Assembly (NCBI RefSeq): GCF_001194135.2
Contig: NC_068982.1
Coordinates: forward strand, 35,598,506 to 35,662,505
Source: Octopus bimaculoides
Lineage: Eukaryota
DNA length: 64,000 nucleotides
Direction: 5' to 3'
Below the pieces are notes generated by a model, which searched no databases, was not told the DNA's origin, and was given only the letters and a program-made list of their open reading frames with translations. This document shows positions 944-63,938 of the stretch, piece by piece (position 1 is the stretch's first letter; the number at the start of each line of letters is the position of its first letter). The translations under genes were made by a program, and so were the position numbers.

Positions 944-1721
944 NNNNNNNNNNNNNNNNNNNNNNNNNNNNNNNNNNNNNNNNNNNNNNNNNNNNNNNNN
1001 NNNNNNNNNNNNNNNNNNNNNNNNNNNNNNNNNNNNNNNNNNNNNNNNNNNNNNNNNNNNNNNNNNNNNNNNNNNNCATACATACACACAGTGGACTTCT
1101 TTCAGTTTTAATGTACCAGATCTTCCCTCAAGGTTTTGGTTGGTCAAAAGCTGTAGGCAAATACACTTGCTCAAGGTGCTACATAGTGGGGCTGAACTCA
1201 AAATCATGCAAGATTCTAAATCATACAGTTATATCTGCATGTGTTGAAGTAAATGAATTTCATTGTTTTTTTAACTTGACCATTCAGTTGTTTAATTAAT
1301 TAAACAACCTACTTTGATCAACAGACAGGTTTTTTTTACAAACAGAAAAATATTTGTGAAGAGTTTTGGAAAGTAGAAATTTGCATAATTAAAAATAAAA
1401 AAAAAAAGCAGTAGGAAATAAATAACTCGAGTGAGCCAGTGGTATGTCGTTAGATAAATATGAGATGATGTATTGAATGAAATGCAGATAATTCTCGATT
1501 AATTGTAATTTTCTCCTTTGTTGAAGAAAGAAATCTAAAACTTAGCAGTAATTGTTAGTGATGCTAAAGAAAAATGGAAATAATTTCAAGTCTTTGAGAA
1601 TTAATCACACAAAATTTCTGTGTGCCTAGGTGGAAATCTGATCTTTATTTACAGGTGATGTGGTGGTGGTGGGGTGGGGGGAGTCAGTTGTAAACATATT
1701 ACAAATCTTACTGATGCTCAC

Positions 1722-12269: not shown

Positions 12270-12342
12270 GGTGCTTTGCAAGATGTTAAAATTGTAACAA
12301 AGTCACATGGATATCTCATACAGTGTCCACATCAAGACACAA
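12270..12342 (+). CDS. NELL: NELL-like gene, in-window exon 1 (end of TSPN/LamG domain), phase 0-1
   Basis: tttttcag|GGT...ACA A|gtaaga. Translates GALQDVKIVTKSHGYLIQCPHQDT, matching the NELL G-x-x-Q-D/N-V...G-Y-I-x-Q-C-P segment. Joins in frame to the 21310 exon. Confidence 0.88.
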
Positions 12343-17149: not shown

Positions 17150-17690
17150 AGGCACAGGAGTGGTTGTGTGGTAAGTAGCTTGCCTACCAACCACATGGTT
17201 CCAGGTTCAGTCCCACTGCATGGCACCTTAGGCAAGTGTCTTCTACAATAGCCTCAGGTCAACCAAAGCCTTGTGAGTGGATCTGGTAGACAAAAACTGA
17301 AAAAAGCCTGTCATATATATATATGTTTGTGTGTCTGTGTTTGTCCTCCCACCATCACTTGACAACCGATGATGGTCTGTTTATGTCCCCGTAACTTAGC
17401 AGTTCGGCAAAAGAGACGGATAGAATTAATTCCCTTTCAATCTTTTCAGTTCAGCAATGTCTTATGTTGTTTTGTAGAATGTTGCATCATTTCACTTAAC
17501 GACACCCGTAATCAATTCAGAGATAGGCTCCTAAGGCTGGTATAGAGTTATACGAAATTTCACTACATGTAGCTAATATTTGAAATATGACCACCTTAAC
17601 CCTTTAGTATTAGGCTTAGAAAGAATAAGTCCTGGGGTCAATTCGTTTGACCCATTCAAGCATGAGAAAAGTGAACATTAAAATGATGAT
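17150..17690 (+). mobile_element. tRNA/CORE-like SINE family B, interrupted by a 190-bp insertion
   Basis: ggttgtgtggtaagtagc...ggttcagtcccactgcatggcaccttaggcaagtgtcttctac, with an internal (TA)n. Other copies at about 16587-16900, 18135-18290(-), 30445-30830, 37480-37610(-), 47248-47620, 52545-52700(-), 53440-53850(-), 56010-56370, 59420-59780. Confidence 0.85.
17424..17611. repeat. inverted local duplicate of 23518-23715
   Basis: About 190 bp, differing only by two small indels and a few substitutions. Confidence 0.92.
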
Positions 17691-19159
17691 ATGAAGGAGT
17701 GACAAAATCAAGAGAGTGCTGGTTTAAATGCATTACAGTATTTACTTATGCCACTTGACAGTCCAAGTTCAAACCCTACCAAAATTAGCTTTGACTGTCT
17801 TGTACTAAGTGGTGGGACTTGCACACACACCTATTTATCATCATCATCATTTTAACATCCACATTTCCATGCTGGCATGAGTGGGCTGGATGGAATTTCT
17901 CGAGGTGGATTTTCTTAAACTGGATGCCTTTCCAGTCACCAACCTTCACATTTCCCCATGGCCATACATGCTTTCACAGAATATTGACAACAAAGGAAAT
18001 CACTAGTATGATGGTGACACTTGCTTGTTATTGTCACATGGTATGAATGGCAAGGAGATAGTAACACACACACATGCATGCACACACACATACACACACA
18101 CACATGCACACATGCATATGTACATGCATGCATGACAGGTTTCTTTCAGTTTCCATCTACGAAATCCACTTAGAAGGCTTTGGTCAACCAAGGGCCATAG
18201 TAGAAGACACTTACCCAAGGTGTCTTCTACTACGTGGGACTGAACCCAGAACCAAGTGGTTGGGAAGCAAACTTCTTACCACACAACGATGCTTGCTCAT
18301 CATTTCATATTTACATCTGGTTATTCATTTAATCCAGTTTTTTCAAGTCATTGCCCCCCCTCCTCCATACCTAAATAAACCATTATTACTGTTACCATCA
18401 TCATTATTTGTACCATATGTTGGTTAATAAGGAAAGAATTCACCTGAAAGCTCTAAGTCCCTTCTGACTTCATTAATGATTTCAGTAAGGCAATGGAGAT
18501 AGATTTATGTAAATATTGTTTAACCCTGAGTCAACCCTGACCCAACAGACCAATGATGAAAAACATTCCAATGCGACCTCTTTGTTGTTGACAGTAGGTT
18601 TGGTGATTTGGGAAAAATATGGCTGCTCTTTCTACCTGGTCAAGTGACCACATCACAACACCCTCGTTGGCTCATAATGGTTAAAGATTTTTAAGAAGCA
18701 AAACTCTCACATCATGTATACTGTCTATATTTTCTGTTTATGTCTGCTTATTGTTGGCGTAGGTTTTGCAAGACTTCTTGAGACAGCACTTTCTGGTGTC
18801 AGCTCTTCTTTCTAATTATGGTGTTCTATTCTATGTCTTGCTACTTTAAACTACTGTTGGTCATTTTGTTTACAGGAGGTGTAAAACCACATCATTGTTG
18901 CCAAAGTAGTGTCAATGGGAAGATACACATCACAAACACACATGATGATGATTTGAGAGAGCTGTTAGAATTTGGGATGTGCCTCACAATAATTCCATAC
19001 CAAGTTCACATACTAAGTGTTGGGAGTTCAAATCTTGGCAAATCAAAAAACATAAAAATAAACAAGCTTTTGACGGTTTTATAGATATTTTGAAATTATA
19101 ATGCTAGGTGTTTCCATTATTTTGTCCAACCCCTATATATATATATATATATATATAAA

Positions 19160-21309: not shown

Positions 21310-21392
21310 GTTGCCCGACATGTGCACAGCATCAACATCTGCAGAAAATGTATGAAAAAATGCAGAGCGATATCCAAGATTTGAATAAAAAA
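21310..21392 (+). CDS. NELL: NELL-like exon 2 (CPTC motif and coiled coil), phase 1-0
   Basis: tttccag|GT TGC CCG ACA TGT...AAA AAA|gtaagt. Translates (S)CPTCAQHQHLQKMYEKMQSDIQDLNKK; CPTC followed by a coiled coil is the NELL hallmark. Confidence 0.92.
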
Positions 21393-24033: not shown

Positions 24034-24162
24034 CTTCTGCAGGCAGAAGAAAGATTGTTGAAAGTGGAACAGTCCCCTTGTCATTATTGCATTTATAATG
24101 ATACAATGAAAAAAGAGGGGGAGAGGTGGAGCCCTAACAAGTGTACAGTTTGTATATGCAAG
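24034..24162 (+). CDS. NELL: NELL-like exon 3 (end of coiled coil, start of VWC1), phase 0-0
   Basis: tttcag|CTT...AAG|gttggt. LLQAEERLLKVEQSPCHYCIYNDTMKKEGERWSPNKCTVCICK, with the VWC W...C-x-x-C-x-C pattern. Confidence 0.93.
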
Positions 24163-26861: not shown

Positions 26862-26952
26862 AATACGTCAGTTGTATGTAAACACAGGGATTGCTCAGTA
26901 GTGGATTGCCGGAATCCCGTTTATCGAGATTGTTGTAAACCAGCTTCTGATA
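26862..26952 (+). CDS. NELL: NELL-like exon 4 (second half of VWC1), phase 0-1
   Basis: ttcatcag|AAT...GAT A|gtaagt. NTSVVCKHRDCSVVDCRNPVYRDCCKPASD. Confidence 0.9.
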
Positions 26953-28517: not shown

Positions 28518-28600
28518 ATTGCTGTATCATGGATAACAATGAATATTATAACCCTGGGGAAAAATTCCAAAAAAGTAACTGTTTCTATTGTGCCTGTGAT
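28518..28600 (+). CDS. NELL: NELL-like exon 5 (first half of VWC2), phase 1-0
   Basis: ttggacag|AT TGC...GAT|gtaagt. (N)CCIMDNNEYYNPGEKFQKSNCFYCACD. Confidence 0.92.
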
Positions 28601-28803: not shown

Positions 28804-29373
<570 letters not shown>

Positions 29374-29400
29374 ACTTTCTCTCTTCATTTTTATCTCAAT

Positions 29401-29438
29401 CCTTTCTGTCGAAGAGCATAGGCTCAAAACATAAAGGA
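29401..29438 (+). ncRNA. degenerate hammerhead-like motif in a Penelope-like terminal repeat
   Basis: ccttt-CUGUCGA-A-GAGC auag GCUC-aaaac-ata-aagg. cgaaacgt appears decayed to caaaacat, and position 6 of the core is U. Confidence 0.4.
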
Positions 29439-31369: not shown

Positions 31370-31469
31370 AATGCAAGCATAGTTTGTAACCAGACTTCAT
31401 GCCCTGAACTAAATTGCTCAAAGGACAGTAGAATATATATTGATGGAGAATGCTGCCCAATATGCAATG
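31370..31469 (+). CDS. NELL: NELL-like exon 6 (second half of VWC2), phase 0-1
   Basis: tatttcag|AAT...AAT G|gtaggt. NASIVCNQTSCPELNCSKDSRIYIDGECCPICN, ending in the canonical CC-x-x-C. Confidence 0.93.
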
Positions 31470-35313: not shown

Positions 35314-35433
35314 GAACCAATTTTTGTGCATTAGACCATAATTGTCATGTCAATGCAACTTGTGTGAATCTCACAACAAGATACATCTGCCAGTGTAAGT
35401 CTGGATTCCATGGAAATGGTACTCACTGCAAAG
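35314..35433 (+). CDS. NELL: NELL-like exon 7 (EGF1), phase 1-1
   Basis: tttccag|GA ACC...AAA G|gtaaaa. (G)TNFCALDHNCHVNATCVNLTTRYICQCKSGFHGNGTHCK, a six-Cys EGF domain. Confidence 0.94.
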
Positions 35434-42678: not shown

Positions 42679-43617
42679 TATATATATATATATATATATA
42701 TTGAAATAGATAGCATGCTTGAATAGTCAGTAATAGATGCATGATTAGATTTATATCTAGAAAGACTATTTGTTTTCTCTTGACATATAAATATTTACAA
42801 ATGTATAACAGTACACACACACACGATAACATCTTAATGAAAGTAAATGTACAATATGGTGAAATAACAAAAGGACCATATTTTTTTTTTGTTTAATTAA
42901 TGGGTGTTTTTTTCCCCCTTTGTTCCTGATAGTTTATCTTTCACATTTTCATTACCTCCAGCTCTTGGCTCCCTTTAATGGAGTTCACTTTGTTGCAAGT
43001 ATTTCTACCTGGTTTTCTGGCTGAGGCTAATCCATTCATTCATATCATTAGCATCAGGTTTTTTTCCATGCTAGCATTGCTTACATGAGAAGAAACTGAG
43101 GCAGGATCTTTTTTACGGCTGAATGCACTTCCTGTTGCTGACCTTTACCTGTTTTTGAAGTAAAGGTTTATTTTTGTCTTGTTTTGTTCTTTTTAATCCA
43201 GAGGAATTAGAAAGTGCAGAGCCAGTGGATAATTTGTTGACTAGATATGTCACCAAAAACATCACCAATTGTAGTCCAACTACAAATGGTGACATTAACC
43301 TTACTTTTACTTTATTGGTCTTGACTATCCTGTTAAAAGATCATGGCTGTTGCCCTTTCTTTCTCTCAATGACCCCCAAAACAACAGTGAAACAACAGTT
43401 AAAATTTAATTTTCTAAATTCAGAGGAATTTTTTCAAAGGAATTTTATGCTATTTCCTTCTTTGTTTTGATGCTTCTTCCTAACATTTTTTTTTTGTATT
43501 TCTATATTTCAGATCAGTAACAATAATTAGTGGTAGACATTGATAAAATTCCTATAGTTTAATTTTTTTTTTCATTTTTTTTTTATTCCTGTTTTTCATT
43601 TATGATTTTCATTGTAG

Positions 43618-43844
43618 ACATTGATGAATGTGTGTCTGTTGGTGGGAAACATGGACACCACTGCAACGGAAATACAGTCTGTGTAAACACCATTGGATCA
43701 TACCGGTGCCAATGTGCGAACAAGATGGGTGACTATGGTGAGGATGACAGCAGTGGCTCCTGTGAAGGTAGCAGCCTCTCGTCAAAATTGTCAAAATCTG
43801 TGATCTTGCTAAGTCTGTGCCTTAAGTTATGGCTAATGCTGTAA
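43618..43844 (+). CDS. NELL: NELL-like exon 8 (calcium-binding EGF2, then read-through hydrophobic C-terminal tail to TAA)
   Basis: ttcattgtag|AC ATT GAT GAA TGT. (D)IDECVSVGGKHGHHCNGNTVCVNTIGSYRCQCANKMGDYGEDDSSGSCE then GSSLSSKLSKSVILLSLCLKLWLML*. The EGF part is certain. The 3' end is less so, because a weak phase-1 donor G|gtagca exists at 43767. Confidence 0.85.
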
Positions 43845-44082
43845 ATATTGCTATCTCAATCTAATTTATACTAATGTCTTTATTTAAGTGTACATTATTA
43901 AAAAAATACAAAACAAACAAACACAAATCAAAAAATACAAACTGTAGCATATTTATTTTCAACATAAAAATTAACTCACTTATTACAAAGAAAAAAAAAT
44001 CAAATACACAAAAAAAAAAGTAAGCAAACAAAGAACTTTTTCAGTTTTCTACCTCTGGAAATTCAACTGTAGTCTTACAGAG

Positions 44083-44088
44083 AATAAA
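44083..44088 (+). promoter_or_regulatory. candidate polyadenylation signal AATAAA
   Basis: AATAAA about 240 nt after the 43844 stop. The hexamer is common in AT-rich DNA, so support is weak. Confidence 0.25.
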
Positions 44089-44345
44089 CCCCATTTCTTA
44101 TTTGTCTGAGTTTGTGTCATTACAAGTTTAAAAAAAAACTACTTCACCCATTCAACCTCAAATATATTTATTGTTTTTTTTTTTCCTTTCCCTTTTCATT
44201 CTTTTATTTAAATCTCTCAGAATGAATTAAATGTTCCAAATTTAAGGTAATTTAATATTATAATTATTATTATTATAATTATCATCATCATCACCTTTAT
44301 TATTCTTATTCTACTTATCATTACTACTACTTTTATTATTACTTC

Positions 44346-44397
<52 letters not shown>

Positions 44398-46916: not shown

Positions 46917-47918
46917 CATCATCATCATTGCCATTATTATACTTATTTATTTATTGTATCAGTGATGTTCTTTTCTTAGTAGAGAGTATTTTTGTTTTTT
47001 AAATCATAGCTCTGTTGGTTTTATTTGAGTGTATAGGTTTAAATATATACTTGATTAGTTGTATTAGTGTTATATACACAGACTGGTACTGGTTTAATAT
47101 ACTCTACTTCTTTTTTTTTTACATCTATTTGGATATACATATGAATGTGTATGCCTATGTGCATGTGTGAGTGATCATAAACTTACTTGCGATGTATCTA
47201 CTTCAGTTATCAATGCACATATAAAAGATGAAATACATACTACATAGGCACAGGTATGGCTGTGTGGTAAGAAGCTTACTTCCCAACCACATGGTTCTGG
47301 GTTCATTCACATTGTGTGGTACCTTGGGCAAGTGTCTTCTATTATAGCTTCCAGCTGACAAAAGCCTTGTGAGTGGATTTGGTAGATGGAAACTGAAAGA
47401 AACTGATCTTATATATATATATATATATATATTTGTGTCTGTGTTTGTCCCCTACCAATACTGCTTGACAACCAGTGTTGGTGTGTTTGCAATTCAGCAA
47501 AAGAGACCGATAGAATACACACAAGGCTTAAAAAATAAGTACTGGGGTTGATTCATTTGACTAAAAATTCAAGGCGGTGTGCTAGTATAGCCACAGTCTA
47601 ATGACTGGAACAAGTAAAAGAAAAGAGAATATAATTTATTTCATATTTATATCTTATTTTTTGGTGGCACTATACAATTATGTGGAACTGTATTCCATTA
47701 TAATTTCCCATTTAGATCTTTGCTGTCATAATGCTTTCGTATTTTGATTTCATTATTACCCAGGATTCTCTGTTATTATTAATCTATGAAGCATAGATTA
47801 CATCATAAGAAAATAATGCAAGATTTATATCAGGAATTCATATAAAACCAGAAGCAAAATAATTGTGTAAATTTCTGGACTACCAGCTTATGGTTCATGA
47901 ATTCATACCTGCTCTAGA

Positions 47919-50355: not shown

Positions 50356-51489
50356 ATTGCAGGTGTCTATCTCATTGGCATTGTGACGCAAACAGAATGT
50401 AATTCTTGATGCTCCTTAAACAGGGATGAGCAGCAGATTCTTGGAGATATTACTTGTAGCAGACTCATATGTATTGAGAAGGGGGCGGTATTTATTTACT
50501 TAGCATTGTTGAATCAAGAGTTAAGTTTTGAGTTTCAATTCTTTTACTTGTTTCAGTCATTATACCACAATCATACTAGGATACTATCTTAATGGGTTTG
50601 GTTAAGCAAATTTTCCCTCAGTACATATTATTAAACCTGGTACTTATGCTATCGGTCTCTTTTTGCTAAGCTGCAGAGAACATAAATGAGTGTTGGTTGT
50701 CAAGCAGTGAGACACAAAAGTTTCTAATGAGCTTACAGGCTCTTTGGGCTGAAGCTTATTCCAGCTACCATAGCATACTAGTGACTGAGGTTGTAAGCTT
50801 CCCCATCTCAAACAAGATTCCAGTCACAGGGTACTAGCAAAAGCTAATACCATCACAGGGTACTAGCTTTTGCTAGTACTTATTTTAAGCTGAGTAGACT
50901 GGAGTAAGACAAAATTAAGTATTTTGCTCAGGGACATTATGTATCACTTGATCCAGGAATTGAAACCATGACCTTATGATCATGAATGCAATACTCTAAC
51001 CATTAGGCCACATGCTTTTACTGCCTTTATGTAGTCCTTTTCATAACAGCATAGTTTATACATCAGTGATTCTCATGATAGAAAATTAAAGAATGCTCCT
51101 TTGTCTGTGCATGATTCAAAGTAATTTCATTGCATATATTTAGGAAAGACAAAATCCTCAATGTGCTATGTCTTATAAATCCTTTGAAGCTTCATGTTTG
51201 TGAGTTCAGCTTTGGCCAATAGATTGGCAAGAAAGGGCTGGGCATTAACCAAGGTGACTTTTCCTATGACAACTAATATTAATTATTGACTAATATTATT
51301 TTATTCTCTCCATATATTTATTTATAATTAGCTATTTAGTGTTACTTGCTTTATATATGTCACACTATAGTAGCCTAAGTGATCAATAATACTGTTTGAA
51401 AAATTGTTATACTATCTTCTCTCTTTCTATCTCTCTCTCCCCTCTCCTTTCTGCTTGGCTTTGCAAACAAAGATTTACAGAGCGGGGGT

Positions 51490-51850: not shown

Positions 51851-54800
51851 TATTTTGGCATTGTGTGTTTGATAATGCAACTGCGATTTTGGTGAAAAGT
51901 GTTTAGTTATTATAGACTCAGTTTTGATTGAGGCAAAGTTTTGCCTGACTGCTTATTCAGTTGGTAGTGAAAAATTTTCTTTTTAATGTTTATTTAGGAA
52001 AATTTTCATTATAAGTAAAAATGGGTTAAGGAGTAAATTACAATTATAGGAAGAATCCTATAAGAGAAAAAGAATGTGTTTTATTATTTAGGAGTGAAAT
52101 TCTTAAATATTAAATATAAAATTAGGGAATGGAGAGTGAATGGATGAAGAAAGAAATTATATTTAAAGTGTGTGAAGGTTAAAAAATGGTTGAGTTATGT
52201 AGAGAGGAATTGTGAGTGTAACATTTCTTTTAAATTTTTCAAGGTCAAAGAGAATATTTTTTAAACTGACCGAGTTATTACATGTATATATATACATATA
52301 TATTACCATCATCATCATCATCATTATTTAACATCCATTTTTCCATGGTTGCATGGGTCAGACAGAATTTGTTGAGGCAGATTTTCTACCACCTGATACC
52401 CTTCCTGAGCAAGGTAATATTTCCCCATGGCCAGACATTTTCACAGAATATTGGAAATGAACAACCTTGCTTTTATGATGATGATGCTCATTTACAGTCA
52501 TCATGTGATGTCTAGACAAGATACTCATACACGCATACATATAGAATGGGCTTTTTCAGTTTCCATCTACAAAATACACTTGCAAGGCTTTGGTTAGCCC
52601 AGAGCTAGAGAAGACACTTGCTCAAAGTGCCATGCAGTGGAACTGAACCCCAAAACATATGGTGGGAAGCAAGCTTCTTACCAAACGGCCATGCCTCATA
52701 TTGTAAAATGATTGGTGTTATGTAAATGAGCCTTGACATCATAGGTTTGAGAAGATCCTTCAGTTTGTCAACCTCTCTAATGCTGATGCCATGATCAAAT
52801 GCTCCCAACACACTCTATGGAAAGGTTATAAAGAGCATCCAGTTATAGCAACTCTGCTAATATGAAACATGCAAGACGTGCCCCACTAACCATATCTAGG
52901 AAAACAGTAACTCCAAATAAGAACCCATTGTATCTCTTACAGCATGGATGGCAGACATAAAAGGACAATGATGATATTCCCAGAGGCTTATTAAAGCTTC
53001 CAGGTTTATTACAATGAGTTAACAAACTAGTTATTCAATACGCTACTGTTAGTTAAGAGTATATAGTATATTAGTATATTCTCTCCATGCTGCATATTGA
53101 TACTTGGATGGAATGAACTATGTACTTAAGCTAACTTTGTTGACAGAGTACAAATTGTTACCCCATCTTCATCTAGCAGAACTCTACCATGGTTCTTTGG
53201 ATTATCAGAAATCATACTTAATTTAACCATTTGTCATCCATTTTTTTTCCATTGTAATGGAATACAATTATGTGTTTTAGCCAGAATTGTAGTAGCAGAT
53301 TAGCTAATCTATGACAACGGTGTTTTGCAGATGTATTTATGTCTATGTCAAGAGCACCAGTGTGTGTGCACAAAATGGAAACATAACCTTATTAGCATGA
53401 TTATCCTTCCTAGCATACAACCATTTCTACATATCTTTTTATCTTGTTTCAGTCATTGGACTGCAGCCATTCTCAGACACTGCCTTGAAGGGTTTTAGTC
53501 AAACAAACAGTACTTATTTTTTGTTTGAATCTGGTACTTATTCTATTGATCTCTTTTACTGAACTGCCAAGTTACATTGACATAAACAAACCAACAGCAG
53601 TTGTCAAGTGGTGAGTGGTGGGGTGGTGGGGCACAACCATAGATACAAAGACACACATACACAAGTACACTCATATAATATACATATGTGTGTATGATGG
53701 GCTTCCACACAGTTTCCAAGTACCAATTTCTCTCACAAGGCATTGGTCAGCCCAAGGCTATAGTAGAGGACACTTGTCAACCAAGGTACCAGACAGTGGG
53801 ACTGAACTCAAAACTAAGTAGTTACAAAGCACACTTCTTTACCACACAGTTATGCCTGTTTCTATATTCTGTTACCATTATATATTTGATACAAATTGCA
53901 ATACATGGGCAGAATCGGTAGAGTGTCAGACAAAATGTCTTGTAGTATTAATTGCAGCTCTTTACATTTTGGGCTCAAATTCTACCAAGGTCAACTTTGC
54001 TGCTCTAAGTTGGATAAATTAAAGTATTCATTAAATACTGGAGTTGATTTTACTGACTATACGAGTCATGAAAAATCTGTGGCCTTCAAGATTTTCTGAA
54101 TGGTATGCCAAACAGAAAATTACCTTGAATTTTTTTAGTAGTGCTGCCTGTATCTTGAAAAAGGTGCCCTACCACCACCACCACCACTCAAAACAGAAAA
54201 CTTGGTTATGTGATGATGTAAGAAATCAATATGTAAATGTATTCTTTCCTCAATCTTAATAACAAATGATTATTTAATTTTCACCATCATGAAGCTACAG
54301 CAGTAAAATAAATCTGCTTCTGATACAAAACCAATTGTTAGTGAAGCCTATGTGTGTATGTACGCGCCACAGTGTACGCATGTGTGTGTGTAGTTGATCT
54401 GTATGTGATAGTCATATATGTGAGAGTTTTTGTGTATGTTTTGAGTCAATGCTTATGGATGTATTTATGATTGCTCTTGGGTGTTATGTGCTGCATAGAA
54501 GTTTCCACATGTGAATATAATGTATGTCTTTGTGAAGGTCGACTTTGCCTTTCATCGTTTTTATGGGAGGTCAATAAAATAAGTACCAGTTGAGCACTGG
54601 AGGTCAATGTAATCGACTTACTCCCTCCCTTGAAAACACTGGCCTTGTGCCAAAATTTGAAACCAATATTATGTATGTCTCCTTTAGTGTGTGCATGTGT
54701 ATGTGTGTGTACGTGTGTGTATATTGTTGTGTATATCATTTTACACACTATCAAGCTATAGAATTAGCTGAACATTCACAGCTCTCTCTCCACTCCCCCA

Positions 54801-55770: not shown

Positions 55771-56169
55771 TTAAGCTCTGTTTATCTTGTGACTACTTGC
55801 TAAAAATGAAACAAAAAATATATTTAATTAATACTTAATTCATGTCATTACATAGAATATGATTAAACTTTATCTCTTCTTCTATTTAGCCTGAAAGCTA
55901 ATTTATTTTAATTTCAGTAAATCCATAATGAATTTTCCAAACATTTTATTATCTCTAGTGGCTTACATATTTCAATATATAAATTATTTGTTAAACTTCC
56001 ACAAACAAGCACAGGCATTGCTGTGTGGTTAAAGGATGCTCACATTGAAACTATGTGGTTTCAGGTTCAGTCCCTTTGCACAGCATCTTGAGAAAATTCT
56101 ACTATAGCCCCAGGGAAACCTATGCCTTGTGAATAAATTTCATACATGAAAACTGTGTAGAAGCCTATG

Positions 56170-56200
<31 letters not shown>

Positions 56201-61394: not shown

Positions 61395-63938
61395 TGCAGC
61401 AGCAAAACTGGGTGTTGGGATCTGTTTGGGTGATATTCCCAGTAATTAATAAAATGATAATTTTTTGGATGATTAACTGCATCTTTAGTAATGAAGAATT
61501 CTTTTTTTATACTTTTTGCATCTACTCTATGATTCTGTCTTTTTGATTTTCAGTCTTTATCATCAAGTGTCTTAATTCTTAATTGGATAGATAGTTTAGC
61601 AACTGTATGCATATTCTTTTACTTATTTCAATCATTAAATCATGGCCGTGCTCTCCCCACCCCACAGCTGGAAGGGTTTTAGGCAGTCATATCCAACCTC
61701 GTGTTTATTTTTAAGTTCTGTACTTAACTTTGTGATCTGTGTTTGTTGCACCATTCAGTTGTGGGACATTAACACAGGACACTGTTTTTTTCAAACAGTT
61801 TCTTTGTAGTCTGAATAAATGCACTCAAGTAAGAAACTTGAAATATCAGTTGAGTGCATCATCTTCAAACACATAAAGTCTGCTACATGAATCATGTACT
61901 TTTCCTCTCATCACCTGCCCCAAACATTGTATATATAAACCTTTTTTCTTTTTGCTTTACAAGCTGCATGGCAACCTCATTACTGCTGGTGACATGTAAG
62001 AAAGTACCCTATACATGTTATGAAGTGGTTAGCATTAGGAAGGGTATCCAGCCATAGAAACCATGCCAAAGCAGATATAGTAGCTTGATGCGGTTCTTAG
62101 GACCATCAGATTCAGTCTATGCCAGTATGAAACAGTGATGTCAAACGATGATGATGATGTCAACGTAAAGACAAATACAGAGACAGGCACAAACACACAC
62201 TCACACATGTGTGTGTGTGTTTTTATGTACTTGTCTTTCTCCACAGTTTCCATCTCCCAATTTCACTCACAAGGCATCGATTAGCCTGGGGCTATAGGAA
62301 AAGTCATCCACAATGAGACCAGTTCAGGTATAGTTGTTTTAACCAAACAGAAATGCCTGAAATTAGGTTAATAAATTCTCAATAAGTTTGGTAGAAAGCC
62401 CACAGTTTTGTGGGGAGAGGTGAATCAGCTACATCAAGTCTAGTACTTGATTGGTACTTATTTTATTGACCTCATAAGGATGAAAGGCGAAATTAACCTC
62501 GATAGAATTTGTACTGAGAAGTTAAAGAGCCAGGAGAAACACTGCTAAACATTTTCTCAGACATGCTAATAATTCTATTAGTTCACTGCCTTCACTTAGA
62601 ATAAATACATAGAATATGTAAAGGTCACTCGTGTGAATCCAGCCTGAAACTATGTGCACATCCCAAGAATAAGATACCTTATGCTGATTGCAGGTCAAAC
62701 TTACCAAAATATAATGTAGATGTAAATATTGTTAAAAAATGTTTTATCTATAAAAATGAGATTAATAGTCAAATAATAAATAAAATTCATATTAACAACC
62801 CATTTGAGACATATAGACATTTACATTCTATTAAATTCACCAAATCCTTTTTTAGCTGGGTTTTTAAATCATCTAAAGTAAAACAGGAACTTTCTAATTG
62901 TTAACTAGGGCATCTCTAGGCAGCTGGTTAATCTGCTAGAAATAGCAACCAAATTTCCCTCAAATCAAGTTATACCATACCCTCTTATAAAAAAAAAGGG
63001 AACATTTGTTAACGTAGTCCTAGAAATATTATACCCAAAATTAAGATGGGATGGTCATGGAAGGGATGCTTTTAATCGCAGATTTGTTCAGTTAGAGCTG
63101 ACCCAAGTCTAAACAGCACCTGGAGCTTTTCCATTTCTGCTTTTTTAACTTTTTTTTAGAGTGCAAAAAAGATTTGTTACTGAGCAGTATCAACCACCTC
63201 AGTTGCTCAAATAAAATATTTAACCAAATAAAAATAATCTGATCAATCCCAATTTAGCTAACTTGTATCGTTTGCTATGTCCAAAGGGCTGTTGCTGTTG
63301 AATTGACTGAAATAGTAGTATAGAGCACATCCTTCTGCATTCAAGTTCTTGAGAATGAGAATAGAAATGCTAAGATAACTATTAGTAGTAATAGTGGAAC
63401 TGTAGCTCCTACTCCTTAAAAATCTTGCTCTTGTTGCCAAAGTAAAAATCAATAAATTATAAGACAGTATCCTAAATGTACATATATATATATATATATA
63501 TATACATGTATAAAGTAGAAATTGATATGCTCAGTGCACAACAATTTTCCATTCAGGTTTCAGCTGTTATTGATGATCATATTATGTATGTATGCTCACA
63601 CACACACACATACACACACGTGTGTGTATGTATATATATGTGAAGTGCATGACTTAGAGGTTAGGGTGCTGTGCTCATGATCATAAGATTGTGGCTTCAG
63701 TTCCTGGATTGGACAATGTGTTGTGTTCTTAAACAAGAAAACTTAATTTCATATTGCTCTTGTACTAGAAATGAGTATTCCTGCAACAGACCTGTGTCCT
63801 GTCCAGGTGGGCAATACATGCACCACAGAATCTGGGAACCCAGCCTTATAAGTATATGGCCCTAGAAGAATCTTTTATCCTTTTGTTATATGATATAGAT
63901 ATGTATATATACACACACACACATGTATGTATGTATAT

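What the first reader, a model, noticed from the sequence alone, without database searches (positions are those of the whole stretch)
43768..43844. NELL-like protein may end after EGF2 in a GPI-anchor signal
Seen: after EGF2 the frame continues as GSS-LSSKLSKS-VILLSLCLKLWLML*, i.e. small residues, a polar spacer and a terminal hydrophobic run. The donor at this point is weak (G|gtagca) and I found no EGF/VWC exon in the next 20 kb. Established: vertebrate NELL1/2 are secreted, with six EGF and three more VWC domains, and NELL2 is a ligand for Robo3 and ROS1. Inference: this gene, or one isoform, encodes a short membrane-tethered NELL that would act by contact rather than diffusion.
Basis: partly seen in the sequence, partly recalled or inferred. 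Interest (0 to 1): 0.7.

Follow-up and report, generated by a model that had tools for sequence, protein, structure and literature searches.

The report
Alternative membrane-tethered end of octopus NELL
The octopus NELL gene does splice on from this point to make the ordinary long secreted protein. The 25-codon hydrophobic tail just past the splice site, and a poly(A) signal about 240 bases further on, are conserved across molluscs, so a second, short, probably lipid-anchored NELL isoform is likely.

Summary
After the EGF2 exon (43618-43767) the frame reads GSSLSSKLSKSVILLSLCLKLWLML, with the stop at 43842-43844. The donor AAG|GTAGCA is the weakest of the eight in the window, and no further NELL exon lies in the last 20 kb.

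The idea that the gene may simply end here is wrong. The window matches O. bimaculoides NELL1 isoform X1 (XP_052832185.1, 833 aa) exactly over residues 210-485. That model and its O. sinensis counterpart splice at 43767 into EGF3-6 and three more VWC domains. The gene spans 477 kb in O. sinensis, so 20 kb without an exon means nothing.

The "one isoform" version is supported by comparison. The same in-frame hydrophobic tail follows EGF2 in every mollusc gene or transcript I could examine: gastropods and bivalves, including species annotated only with the long form. In Gigantopelta, oysters, Dreissena and Mya the short protein is the RefSeq model. A Tegillarca RNA contig reads through the intact donor.

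A roughly 50-nt module (CTACCTCT...CTGTAG...AATAAA.CCCATTTC, window 44049-44099) is conserved in the five genomes that keep the donor.

Best reading: splicing competes with intronic polyadenylation, giving secreted or tethered NELL. No octopus transcript was seen, and GPI anchoring is inferred.

The parts
12270..12342 (+). NELL exon encoding the end of the TSPN/laminin-G domain (GALQDVKIVTKSHGYLIQCPHQDT)
   Evidence: The exon chain translates exactly to P0188 residues 210-485. tblastn hits.
21310..21392 (+). NELL exon encoding CPTCAQHQHLQKMYEKMQSDIQDLNKK (coiled-coil region)
24034..24162 (+). NELL exon, first half of VWC1
26862..26952 (+). NELL exon, second half of VWC1 (ends CCKPASD rather than the usual CCPxC)
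28518..28600 (+). NELL exon, first half of VWC2
31370..31469 (+). NELL exon, second half of VWC2
35314..35433 (+). NELL exon EGF1, phase 1-1
43618..43767 (+). NELL exon EGF2 (calcium-binding), phase 1-1. Its 3' end is the donor used by the long isoform X1.
   Evidence: The best solved-structure matches are NELL2 6pog, NEL 9oz6 and NELL1 6pol.
43735..43743 (+). Alternative upstream donor ATG|GTGAGG (cut at 43737|43738). It is used by O. bimaculoides isoform X2 and removes EDDSSGSCEG, including the sixth Cys of EGF2.
   Evidence: P0185 reads ...CANKMGDYG|VTVDC...; sequence.
43765..43773 (+). Weak donor AAG|GTAGCA (cut at 43767|43768). The sequence TGTGAAGGTAGC is identical in Patella and Gigantopelta.
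43768..43844 (+). Read-through extension of the EGF2 exon. It encodes (G)SSLSSKLSKSVILLSLCLKLWLML plus the TAA stop: small residues, a polar spacer and a 14-residue hydrophobic end. This is the candidate GPI or membrane-anchor signal of a short isoform.
43818..43824 (+). TGCCTTA (the Cys-Leu codons of the tail). It is identical at the nucleotide level in octopus, Patella, Gigantopelta, Mizuhopecten, Tegillarca and transcript L003. The reason for this nucleotide-level constraint is unexplained.
   Evidence: the hairpin test was inconclusive
43845..44105 (+). Predicted 3' UTR of the short isoform, about 260 nt
   Evidence: Inferred from the stop codon and the conserved poly(A) module
44049..44099 (+). 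Conserved non-coding module CTACCTCTGGAAATTCAACTGTAG..TTACAGAGAATAAACCCCATTTCTT. It contains CTACCTC (a let-7 seed match, 44049-44055), TGTA (44068-44071) and AATAAA (44083-44088).
   Evidence: 24/25 and 22/23 nt identical to Tegillarca and Gigantopelta. Five-species alignment A3 has invariant blocks. Unique in the window, none expected by chance. No Rfam family.
44100..44119 (+). GT-rich stretch atttgtctgagtttgtgtca just after the AATAAA module, as expected of a downstream element of a cleavage site
   Evidence: Sequence reading; the function is inferred

Best explanation
The EGF2 exon of the octopus NELL gene is a composite exon with two fates.

(1) Long form. If the weak donor at 43767|43768 is used, the transcript runs on through a very long intron to EGF3-6 and three more VWC domains. 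This gives the ordinary long secreted NELL, which is the annotated product.

(2) Short form. If the donor is not used, translation continues for 25 codons to the TAA at 43842. The RNA is then cleaved and polyadenylated about 260 nt further on, at the conserved AATAAA module (44083-44088). The result is a protein of about 510 aa: signal peptide, TSPN, coiled coil, two VWC domains, two EGF domains and a C-terminal hydrophobic tail. The tail most likely acts as a GPI-attachment signal, with the attachment (omega) site at the Gly or Ser right after EGF2. This would tether a trimeric NELL to the cell surface. A very short transmembrane anchor is the alternative.

The logic is the same splice-versus-intronic-poly(A) competition that switches IgM between its secreted and membrane forms. 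Here the outcomes are reversed: read-through gives the tethered form.

Shown here:
- splicing at 43767 in annotated octopus models;
- conservation of the tail and of the poly(A) module;
- short-form proteins and transcripts in other molluscs.

Inferred:
- that octopus makes the short mRNA;
- that the module is the cleavage site;
- that the anchor is GPI.
For: - The window CDS equals O. bimaculoides XP_052832185.1 residues 210-485, and that model splices at 43767.
- The same in-frame tail follows EGF2 in genomic DNA of Patella and Mizuhopecten (annotated long form only), Gigantopelta, Tegillarca, Dreissena and Magallana.
- The tail alignment shows a shared xV(I/L)L..LCL core and a near-invariant Cys.
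- The octopus tail scores higher against 7 orthologous tails than 99.7% of 1277 pseudo-tails from the same window.
- Short proteins ending in this tail are RefSeq or GenBank models in Gigantopelta, Magallana, Crassostrea, Dreissena, Mya, Elysia and Solemya.
- Uninterrupted mRNA-like Logan contigs carry the tail: L003, with a 514-aa ORF and an 846-nt 3' UTR, and a 169-member oyster cluster.
- Tegillarca contig L008 is spliced EGF1 to EGF2 and reads through an intact G|GTA donor into the tail. It is 100% identical to the genome.
- The AATAAA module is conserved in all five donor-keeping species and was not found within 1.5 kb of the stop in Dreissena, Magallana or transcript L003 (only about 0.85 kb of sequence is held for L003).
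- The EGF2 exon is already a hub of alternative processing in octopus: an alternative donor in X2 and exon skipping in X3.
- 11 of 13 mollusc tails pass a rule-of-thumb GPI test. The octopus hydrophobic run is 14 residues, and its best 19-residue Kyte-Doolittle mean is 1.5, which is short for a membrane span.
- The full-length octopus protein starts with a hydrophobic signal-like N-terminus.
Against: - None of the octopod models found is short (O. bimaculoides X1-X3, O. sinensis X1-X2, O. vulgaris, Argonauta).
- An exact look-up of the predicted 510-aa octopus short form found nothing, and so did a look-up of the window's own 80-aa ORF.
- No cephalopod DNA other than the window could be fetched, so conservation inside cephalopods is untested.
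- No species in hand is annotated with both forms from one gene.
- The Tegillarca read-through contig could come from partly processed pre-mRNA, and it is chimeric upstream.
- No real GPI predictor was available. My rule passes 10% of random tails of similar length.
- Some tails look more like a membrane span plus a short basic stub (Mya ends KNIQLRMR; Dreissena and Elysia fail the rule).
- A conserved Cys and the conserved TGCCTTA nucleotides are unusual for a GPI signal that is cut off and discarded.
Confidence: 0.66

Rival explanations
1. The tail region and the downstream AATAAA module are conserved as RNA-level regulators. Candidates are a decoy or premature poly(A) site, or splicing-control elements that tune how much long NELL is made. 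On this view, in octopus the truncated protein is a by-product without a function of its own.
For: Conservation at the nucleotide level exceeds what coding needs. TGCCTTA is identical in six sequences. The tail block is 28/34 nt identical between octopus and Tegillarca, against 69% for the EGF2 coding part. The module is found only where the donor is kept. In octopus the donor is predicted to pair with TGCCTT. No short octopus isoform is annotated.
Against: The open frame, its length, its hydrophobic end, an in-frame 3-nt indel and a near-invariant Cys are all kept across three classes. In several species the tail is the only C-terminus of an abundantly transcribed protein. The donor-motif pairing is not predicted in Gigantopelta or Mizuhopecten, and the folding energies do not stand out.
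Confidence: 0.13
2. The short isoform is real, but its tail is a single-pass membrane anchor with almost no cytoplasmic part, possibly palmitoylated on the conserved Cys. It is not a cleaved GPI signal.
For: There is a near-invariant Cys and a conserved core, which a discarded signal peptide would not need. Mya has 21 hydrophobic residues followed by KNIQLRMR. Gigantopelta, Tegillarca, Solemya and Magallana have 19-residue hydropathy means of 2.0 or more.
Against: The octopus, Patella and Mizuhopecten hydrophobic runs are only 11-15 residues, with 19-residue means of about 1.5. Small residues (GSS, GSA, SSS) sit 8-11 residues upstream, as in GPI signals. Several tails end with no polar stub at all.
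Confidence: 0.17
3. This is ordinary intron. The 25-codon open frame with a hydrophobic end is a chance product of AT-rich sequence, and only the long secreted NELL is made.
For: 23.5% of pseudo read-throughs in this window stay open for 25 codons or more, and 2.65% look GPI-like by the same rule. The EGF1 donor also reads through for 25 codons. All annotated octopod models are long.
Against: Chance cannot explain the same tail at the same exon end in every mollusc gene or transcript examined. Nor can it explain a 24/25-nt identical element 200 nt downstream.
Confidence: 0.04

Closest known systems
Vertebrate NELL1/NELL2 (and chick NEL)
   Same: The domain order is the same: TSPN/laminin-G, coiled coil, two VWC, EGF repeats, C-terminal VWCs. 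The best solved-structure matches of the window's EGF1-2 are NELL2 (6pog), NEL (9oz6) and NELL1 (6pol). The long octopus isoform has six EGF-like and five VWC-like modules, like the vertebrate proteins.
   Different: Vertebrate NELLs are described only as secreted proteins, plus a cytoplasmic variant. I found no report of a membrane-tethered form. The short mollusc form stops after EGF2, so it lacks EGF3, which together with EGF2 forms the Robo3-binding site (PMC7083938). [quoted passage not shown]
IgM heavy-chain secreted/membrane switch (composite terminal exon: weak 5' splice site against an intronic poly(A) site)
   Same: A weak donor at or within an exon competes with a poly(A) site a few hundred bases into the following intron. 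One outcome adds a membrane anchor and the other gives a soluble protein. This comparison rests on textbook knowledge, not on a test here.
   Different: The outcomes are reversed: here read-through plus polyadenylation gives the tethered form. The regulators are unknown. The competition itself has not been demonstrated in octopus.
Secreted cue families with lipid-anchored relatives or isoforms (netrin versus netrin-G, acetylcholinesterase H versus T forms, NCAM-120)
   Same: The same extracellular module is delivered either as a diffusible or as a GPI-tethered protein. In AChE and NCAM this happens through alternative 3' exons. This rests on general knowledge.
   Different: Netrin-G genes are separate genes, not isoforms. 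GPI anchoring of the NELL tail is only predicted.
RefSeq 'NELL1-like' short models of other molluscs (Gigantopelta XP_041352529/30, Magallana XP_034318043/44, Dreissena XP_052244318, Mya XP_052810970)
   Same: They have the same architecture and a homologous tail. These are the orthologous short forms.
   Different: They are automatic models with no annotation of the tail or of membrane anchoring. In Dreissena and Magallana the splice donor is lost, so the short form looks constitutive. In octopus the donor is kept and used.

Membership tests
NELL family | N-terminal TSPN/laminin-G domain | tested here: met
   Pfam Laminin_G_3 matches the full-length octopus protein P0188. Only its last exon (12270-12342) lies in the window.
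NELL family | Two VWC domains before the EGF repeats | tested here: met
   Pfam VWC; four half-domain exons in the window. VWC1 is atypical, ending CCKPASD.
NELL family | Six EGF-like repeats followed by further VWC domains | tested here: met
   Met by the long isoform X1 (P0188 sequence; Pfam). Those exons lie outside the window. The short isoform discussed here would have only two EGF domains and no C-terminal VWC.
NELL family | Closest sequence relatives are NELL proteins | tested here: met
   The top solved-structure hits are NELL2, NEL and NELL1. The orthologues are named NELL1/2-like.
GPI-anchored proteins | N-terminal ER signal peptide | tested here: inconclusive
   P0188 begins MSAVFTGMGPANNNGLILFLIVICIRYATS..., which looks signal-like by eye. 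No signal-peptide predictor was run, and the exon is outside the window.
GPI-anchored proteins | C-terminal signal: small residues at the attachment (omega) site and two residues after it, a polar spacer of 5-11 residues, then a hydrophobic run to the C-terminus with no cytoplasmic domain | tested here: met
   The octopus tail has GSS, an 8-residue spacer and a 14-residue core with mean hydropathy 2.44. 11 of 13 mollusc tails pass. This is my own rule of thumb; 10% of random tails of similar length also pass.
GPI-anchored proteins | Positive call by a trained predictor (NetGPI, PredGPI, big-PI) | not testable with these tools
   No such predictor was available.
GPI-anchored proteins | Release by PI-PLC, or chemical proof of the anchor | not testable with these tools
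   This is an experiment.
Composite terminal exon / intronic polyadenylation isoform | Suboptimal 5' splice site at the exon end | tested here: met
   AAG|GTAGCA matches 4 of 7 consensus positions, the lowest of 8 donors. The same sequence is conserved in Patella and Gigantopelta.
Composite terminal exon / intronic polyadenylation isoform | In-frame stop, and a poly(A) signal with flanking elements shortly downstream in the intron | tested here: met
   The stop is at 43842-43844. AATAAA at 44083-44088 has an upstream TGTA and a GT-rich stretch after it. It is conserved in five species.
Composite terminal exon / intronic polyadenylation isoform | Transcripts in this species that end at the intronic site | not testable with these tools
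   No octopus RNA data could be reached. No short isoform was found among the octopod models, and exact look-ups were negative.
Composite terminal exon / intronic polyadenylation isoform | Such transcripts in related species that keep the donor | tested here: met
   Tegillarca contig L008 is spliced upstream and reads through the donor. The Gigantopelta RefSeq models X1 and X2 are short.

The most novel reading that the evidence does not exclude
Molluscs, octopus included, carry an ancient regulated switch in a single NELL gene. A conserved weak donor competes with an ultraconserved poly(A) module, which also holds a let-7 seed match. The choice decides between a diffusible six-EGF NELL and a trimeric, GPI-tethered two-EGF NELL that acts by cell contact and cannot use the vertebrate EGF2-EGF3 mode of Robo binding. 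This would be the first membrane-bound form of this guidance and differentiation cue, with developmental timing control built into its 3' end.
Probability: 0.35. Interest if true: 0.72.

Novelty: new variant of a known kind. Interest (0 to 1): 0.58.

Why it matters
NELL proteins are treated as secreted cues: NELL2 signals through Robo3 and ROS1, and NELL1 acts in bone. Invertebrate NELLs are essentially unstudied (PMC10084454).

A conserved, tethered, truncated isoform would mean the ancestral lophotrochozoan gene delivered NELL in two ways, by diffusion and by contact. It would also give a simple handle for testing what the N-terminal half (TSPN, coiled coil, VWC, EGF1-2) does on its own.

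The locus also offers a compact, deeply conserved example of splice-versus-poly(A) competition outside vertebrates, with a roughly 50-nt element conserved across three molluscan classes.

In practical terms, octopus annotations probably miss an isoform. Short "NELL1-like" models in other molluscs should not be dismissed as truncated predictions.

Tried and rejected
- First protein search with the joined window exons returned only three distant hits and missed the octopus protein itself. The word-indexed search was lossy, so its silence was not taken as absence.
It was replaced by tblastn and by inspection of Cys-containing segments. Nothing was found.
- I looked for long-form exons within 10 kb downstream of the short-form genes of Tegillarca, Dreissena, Gigantopelta and Magallana. 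None were found. This is uninformative, because the corresponding intron is about 11 kb in Patella and Mizuhopecten.
- DNA for the O. sinensis and Argonauta loci could not be fetched because the genes are too long.
- Exact look-ups of the predicted 510-aa octopus short form and of the window's 80-aa ORF were negative.
- Hairpin idea: donor AAGGUA pairing with the conserved UGCCUU. It is predicted in octopus (pair probability about 0.9), partly in Tegillarca and Patella, and not in Gigantopelta or Mizuhopecten. Folding energies are not unusual. Left as unproven.
- The Rfam scan of 43500-44397 found no family, so the conserved module is not a known RNA gene.
- Literature searches for a GPI or membrane form of NELL, or for mollusc NELL studies, found none.
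- P0001, in which EGF2 joins directly to a C-terminal VWC, comes from an unidentified organism and was not pursued.

Full report
**What is in the window.** The window is AT-rich animal DNA with assembly gaps. On the + strand it carries eight exons of a NELL gene: 12270-12342, 21310-21392, 24034-24162, 26862-26952, 28518-28600, 31370-31469, 35314-35433 (EGF1) and 43618-43767 (EGF2). Joined, they translate exactly to residues 210-485 of Octopus bimaculoides NELL1 isoform X1, XP_052832185.1, 833 aa. O. sinensis differs by one residue in this stretch. The exons for residues 1-209 and 486-833 are not in the window.

**The observation.** It is accurate. Past the donor at 43767|43768 the frame reads GSSLSSKLSKSVILLSLCLKLWLML and stops at 43842-43844. 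The donor AAG|GTAGCA matches 4 of 7 variable consensus positions, the lowest of the eight donors. No EGF or VWC exon is detectable in 43845-64000.

Taken alone, this is weak evidence. In this window 23.5% of pseudo-donor read-throughs stay open for 25 codons or more. 2.65% also pass the rule-of-thumb GPI test that I applied. The EGF1 donor also reads through for 25 codons.

**The gene does not end here.** O. bimaculoides X1 and O. sinensis X1 read ...DDSSGSCEG|VTVDCSPNK..., followed by four more EGF-like and three more VWC modules. So the donor at 43767 is used. The gene spans 477 kb in O. sinensis and 183 kb in Argonauta, so a 20-kb stretch without an exon is ordinary.

The EGF2 exon is also alternatively processed. 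Isoform X2 uses a stronger donor 30 nt upstream (ATG|GTGAGG, 43737|43738) and loses the sixth Cys of EGF2. Isoform X3 skips the exon altogether.

**The tail is nevertheless real sequence under constraint.** A bivalve orthologue, Tegillarca, reads on from the same G|GT into GTNDTTPNKSNLHQSEAVILIMCLCLTLSHMITYFSL*. It shares a 28/34-nt block with octopus, with an in-frame 3-nt indel.

A search of protein cluster representatives, followed by a profile search, found full-length mollusc proteins that end after EGF2 in a homologous tail:
- Elysia, Dreissena, Mya, Gigantopelta (…SCEGSALFSLARTVLLVCLCLIFFHNAV*), Magallana and Crassostrea, and Solemya;
- mRNA-like contigs from public read sets: L003, with a 514-aa ORF and an 846-nt 3' UTR, and a 169-member oyster cluster.

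Patella and Mizuhopecten are annotated only with the long protein. Their genomic DNA still reads through into the same kind of tail: …SCEGSKTYTLETLFTLWLCLILYHIL* and …KCEGIHTSSSPTILNMSLSSLAVAFLLHQCLIYYHLHVS*.

Patella and Gigantopelta share with octopus the exact donor context TGTGAAGGTAGC. The aligned tails share a V(I/L)L..LCL core and a near-invariant Cys. The octopus tail scores higher against seven orthologous tails than 99.7% of 1277 pseudo-tails drawn from the same window.

A Tegillarca contig (L008) is spliced EGF1 to EGF2 and continues through the intact donor into the tail and 60 nt beyond. It is 100% identical to the genome.

**A conserved poly(A) module.** About 205-255 nt after the octopus stop lies CTACCTCTGGAAATTCAACTGTAG..TTACAGAGAATAAACCCCATTTCTT (44049-44099). 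It is 24/25 and 22/23 nt identical to Tegillarca and Gigantopelta. It is also present in Patella and Mizuhopecten.

The five-species alignment has invariant blocks CTACCTCT, CTGTAG, AATAAA and CCCATTTC. The module is unique in the window and matches no Rfam family.

The module was found in all five genomes that keep the G|GTA donor. It was not found within 1.5 kb of the stop in Dreissena or Magallana, or in the roughly 0.85 kb held after the stop of transcript L003. In these three the donor is gone.

It combines a TGTA, an AATAAA and, in octopus, a GT-rich stretch just downstream. From general knowledge, that is the layout of a cleavage and polyadenylation site. CTACCTC is also the seed match of let-7. 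I read the module as the 3' end of the short mRNA. That reading is inference.

**Mechanism proposed.** A weak donor competes with a nearby intronic poly(A) site. Splicing gives the long secreted NELL. Read-through gives a protein of about 510 aa: TSPN, coiled coil, two VWC, two EGF (Pfam) and the tail.

The tail has small residues (GSS), an 8-residue polar spacer and a 14-residue hydrophobic end with no cytoplasmic part. 11 of 13 mollusc tails fit the same pattern. That is the form of a GPI-attachment signal. The octopus, Patella and Mizuhopecten hydrophobic runs look too short for a stable membrane span.

A short transmembrane anchor remains possible. Mya's tail looks like one, and the conserved Cys is not what a discarded signal needs.

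**What is not shown.** I saw no octopus transcript of the short form. None of the octopod models found is short, and exact look-ups were negative. No second cephalopod sequence could be fetched.

The extra nucleotide-level conservation of TGCCTTA inside the tail is unexplained. Pairing with the donor is predicted in octopus but not consistently elsewhere.

**Comparison and novelty.** By domain content and nearest relatives the gene is a NELL. Reviews describe NELLs as secreted and say that invertebrate NELLs are unstudied. Vertebrate Robo3 binding needs EGF2 and EGF3 together, and the short form lacks EGF3.

Short mollusc models exist in RefSeq, but I found no paper that discusses them. The octopus short form is unannotated. 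I rate this a new variant of a known kind, of moderate interest.

Noticed in passing
window 44049-44099; L001 ~29353-29405; L006 ~106430-106480; L004 ~50950-51000; L005 ~86420-86480: A roughly 50-nt non-coding module (CTACCTCT..CTGTAG..AATAAA.CCCATTTC) is conserved across a cephalopod, gastropods and bivalves. It carries a let-7 seed match next to a poly(A) signal. It was found only in the species that keep the EGF2 donor.
   Followed up: yes
window 43818-43824: TGCCTTA (the Cys-Leu codons of the tail) is identical at the nucleotide level in six mollusc sequences, which is more than coding requires. It is complementary to the donor AAGGTA with one G-U pair, but the predicted pairing is not consistent across species.
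   Followed up: partly
window 43737|43738 and the whole exon 43618-43767: Octopus RefSeq isoforms show an alternative donor 30 nt upstream that deletes the sixth Cys of EGF2 (X2, 823 aa). They also show skipping of the EGF2 exon (X3, 783 aa; also O. sinensis X2 and the O. vulgaris model).
   Followed up: partly
window 26862-26952 and 24034-24162: Octopus VWC1 is atypical. It starts EQSPCHYC instead of EQCEC..C and ends CCKPASD instead of CCPxC, so some of the usual cysteines are missing. Argonauta has the same C-terminal pattern (CCKPESD).
   Followed up: no
window 1103-1203, 17165-17288, 18086-18285, 47244-47448, 53641-53960, 56011-56193, 62242-62297: A dispersed repeat of about 200 bp is present in seven diverged copies (69-82% identity) on both strands. 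It is probably a SINE-like element.
   Followed up: partly
L002 79386-79634; L007 47023-47274; L003: In Dreissena, Magallana and the unidentified bivalve transcript L003, the GT donor after EGF2 is lost (CCCAGTTCT, ACCGAGTCT, GACACTATG). The poly(A) module was not found either. In these lineages the short form appears to have become the only product of this gene.
   Followed up: partly
L004 (Patella), protein P0160 versus P0208: Patella isoform X1 has 11 extra residues (roughly ELMFGDGPSL) between EGF2 and EGF3 that X2 lacks. This is probably a micro-exon or an alternative splice site in the same region.
   Followed up: no
L008 1-1138: The Tegillarca read-set contig that carries the read-through NELL fragment is joined upstream to an unrelated 378-aa ORF. 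This is probably an assembly chimera, so only its last 370 nt were used.
   Followed up: partly
P0001 (MetaClust UPI0005AE9BA1): A NELL-like fragment from an unidentified organism joins EGF2 directly to the C-terminal VWC domains (…YECTD|CVDKG…). It appears to lack EGF3-6, either through a different isoform or through an incomplete model.
   Followed up: no
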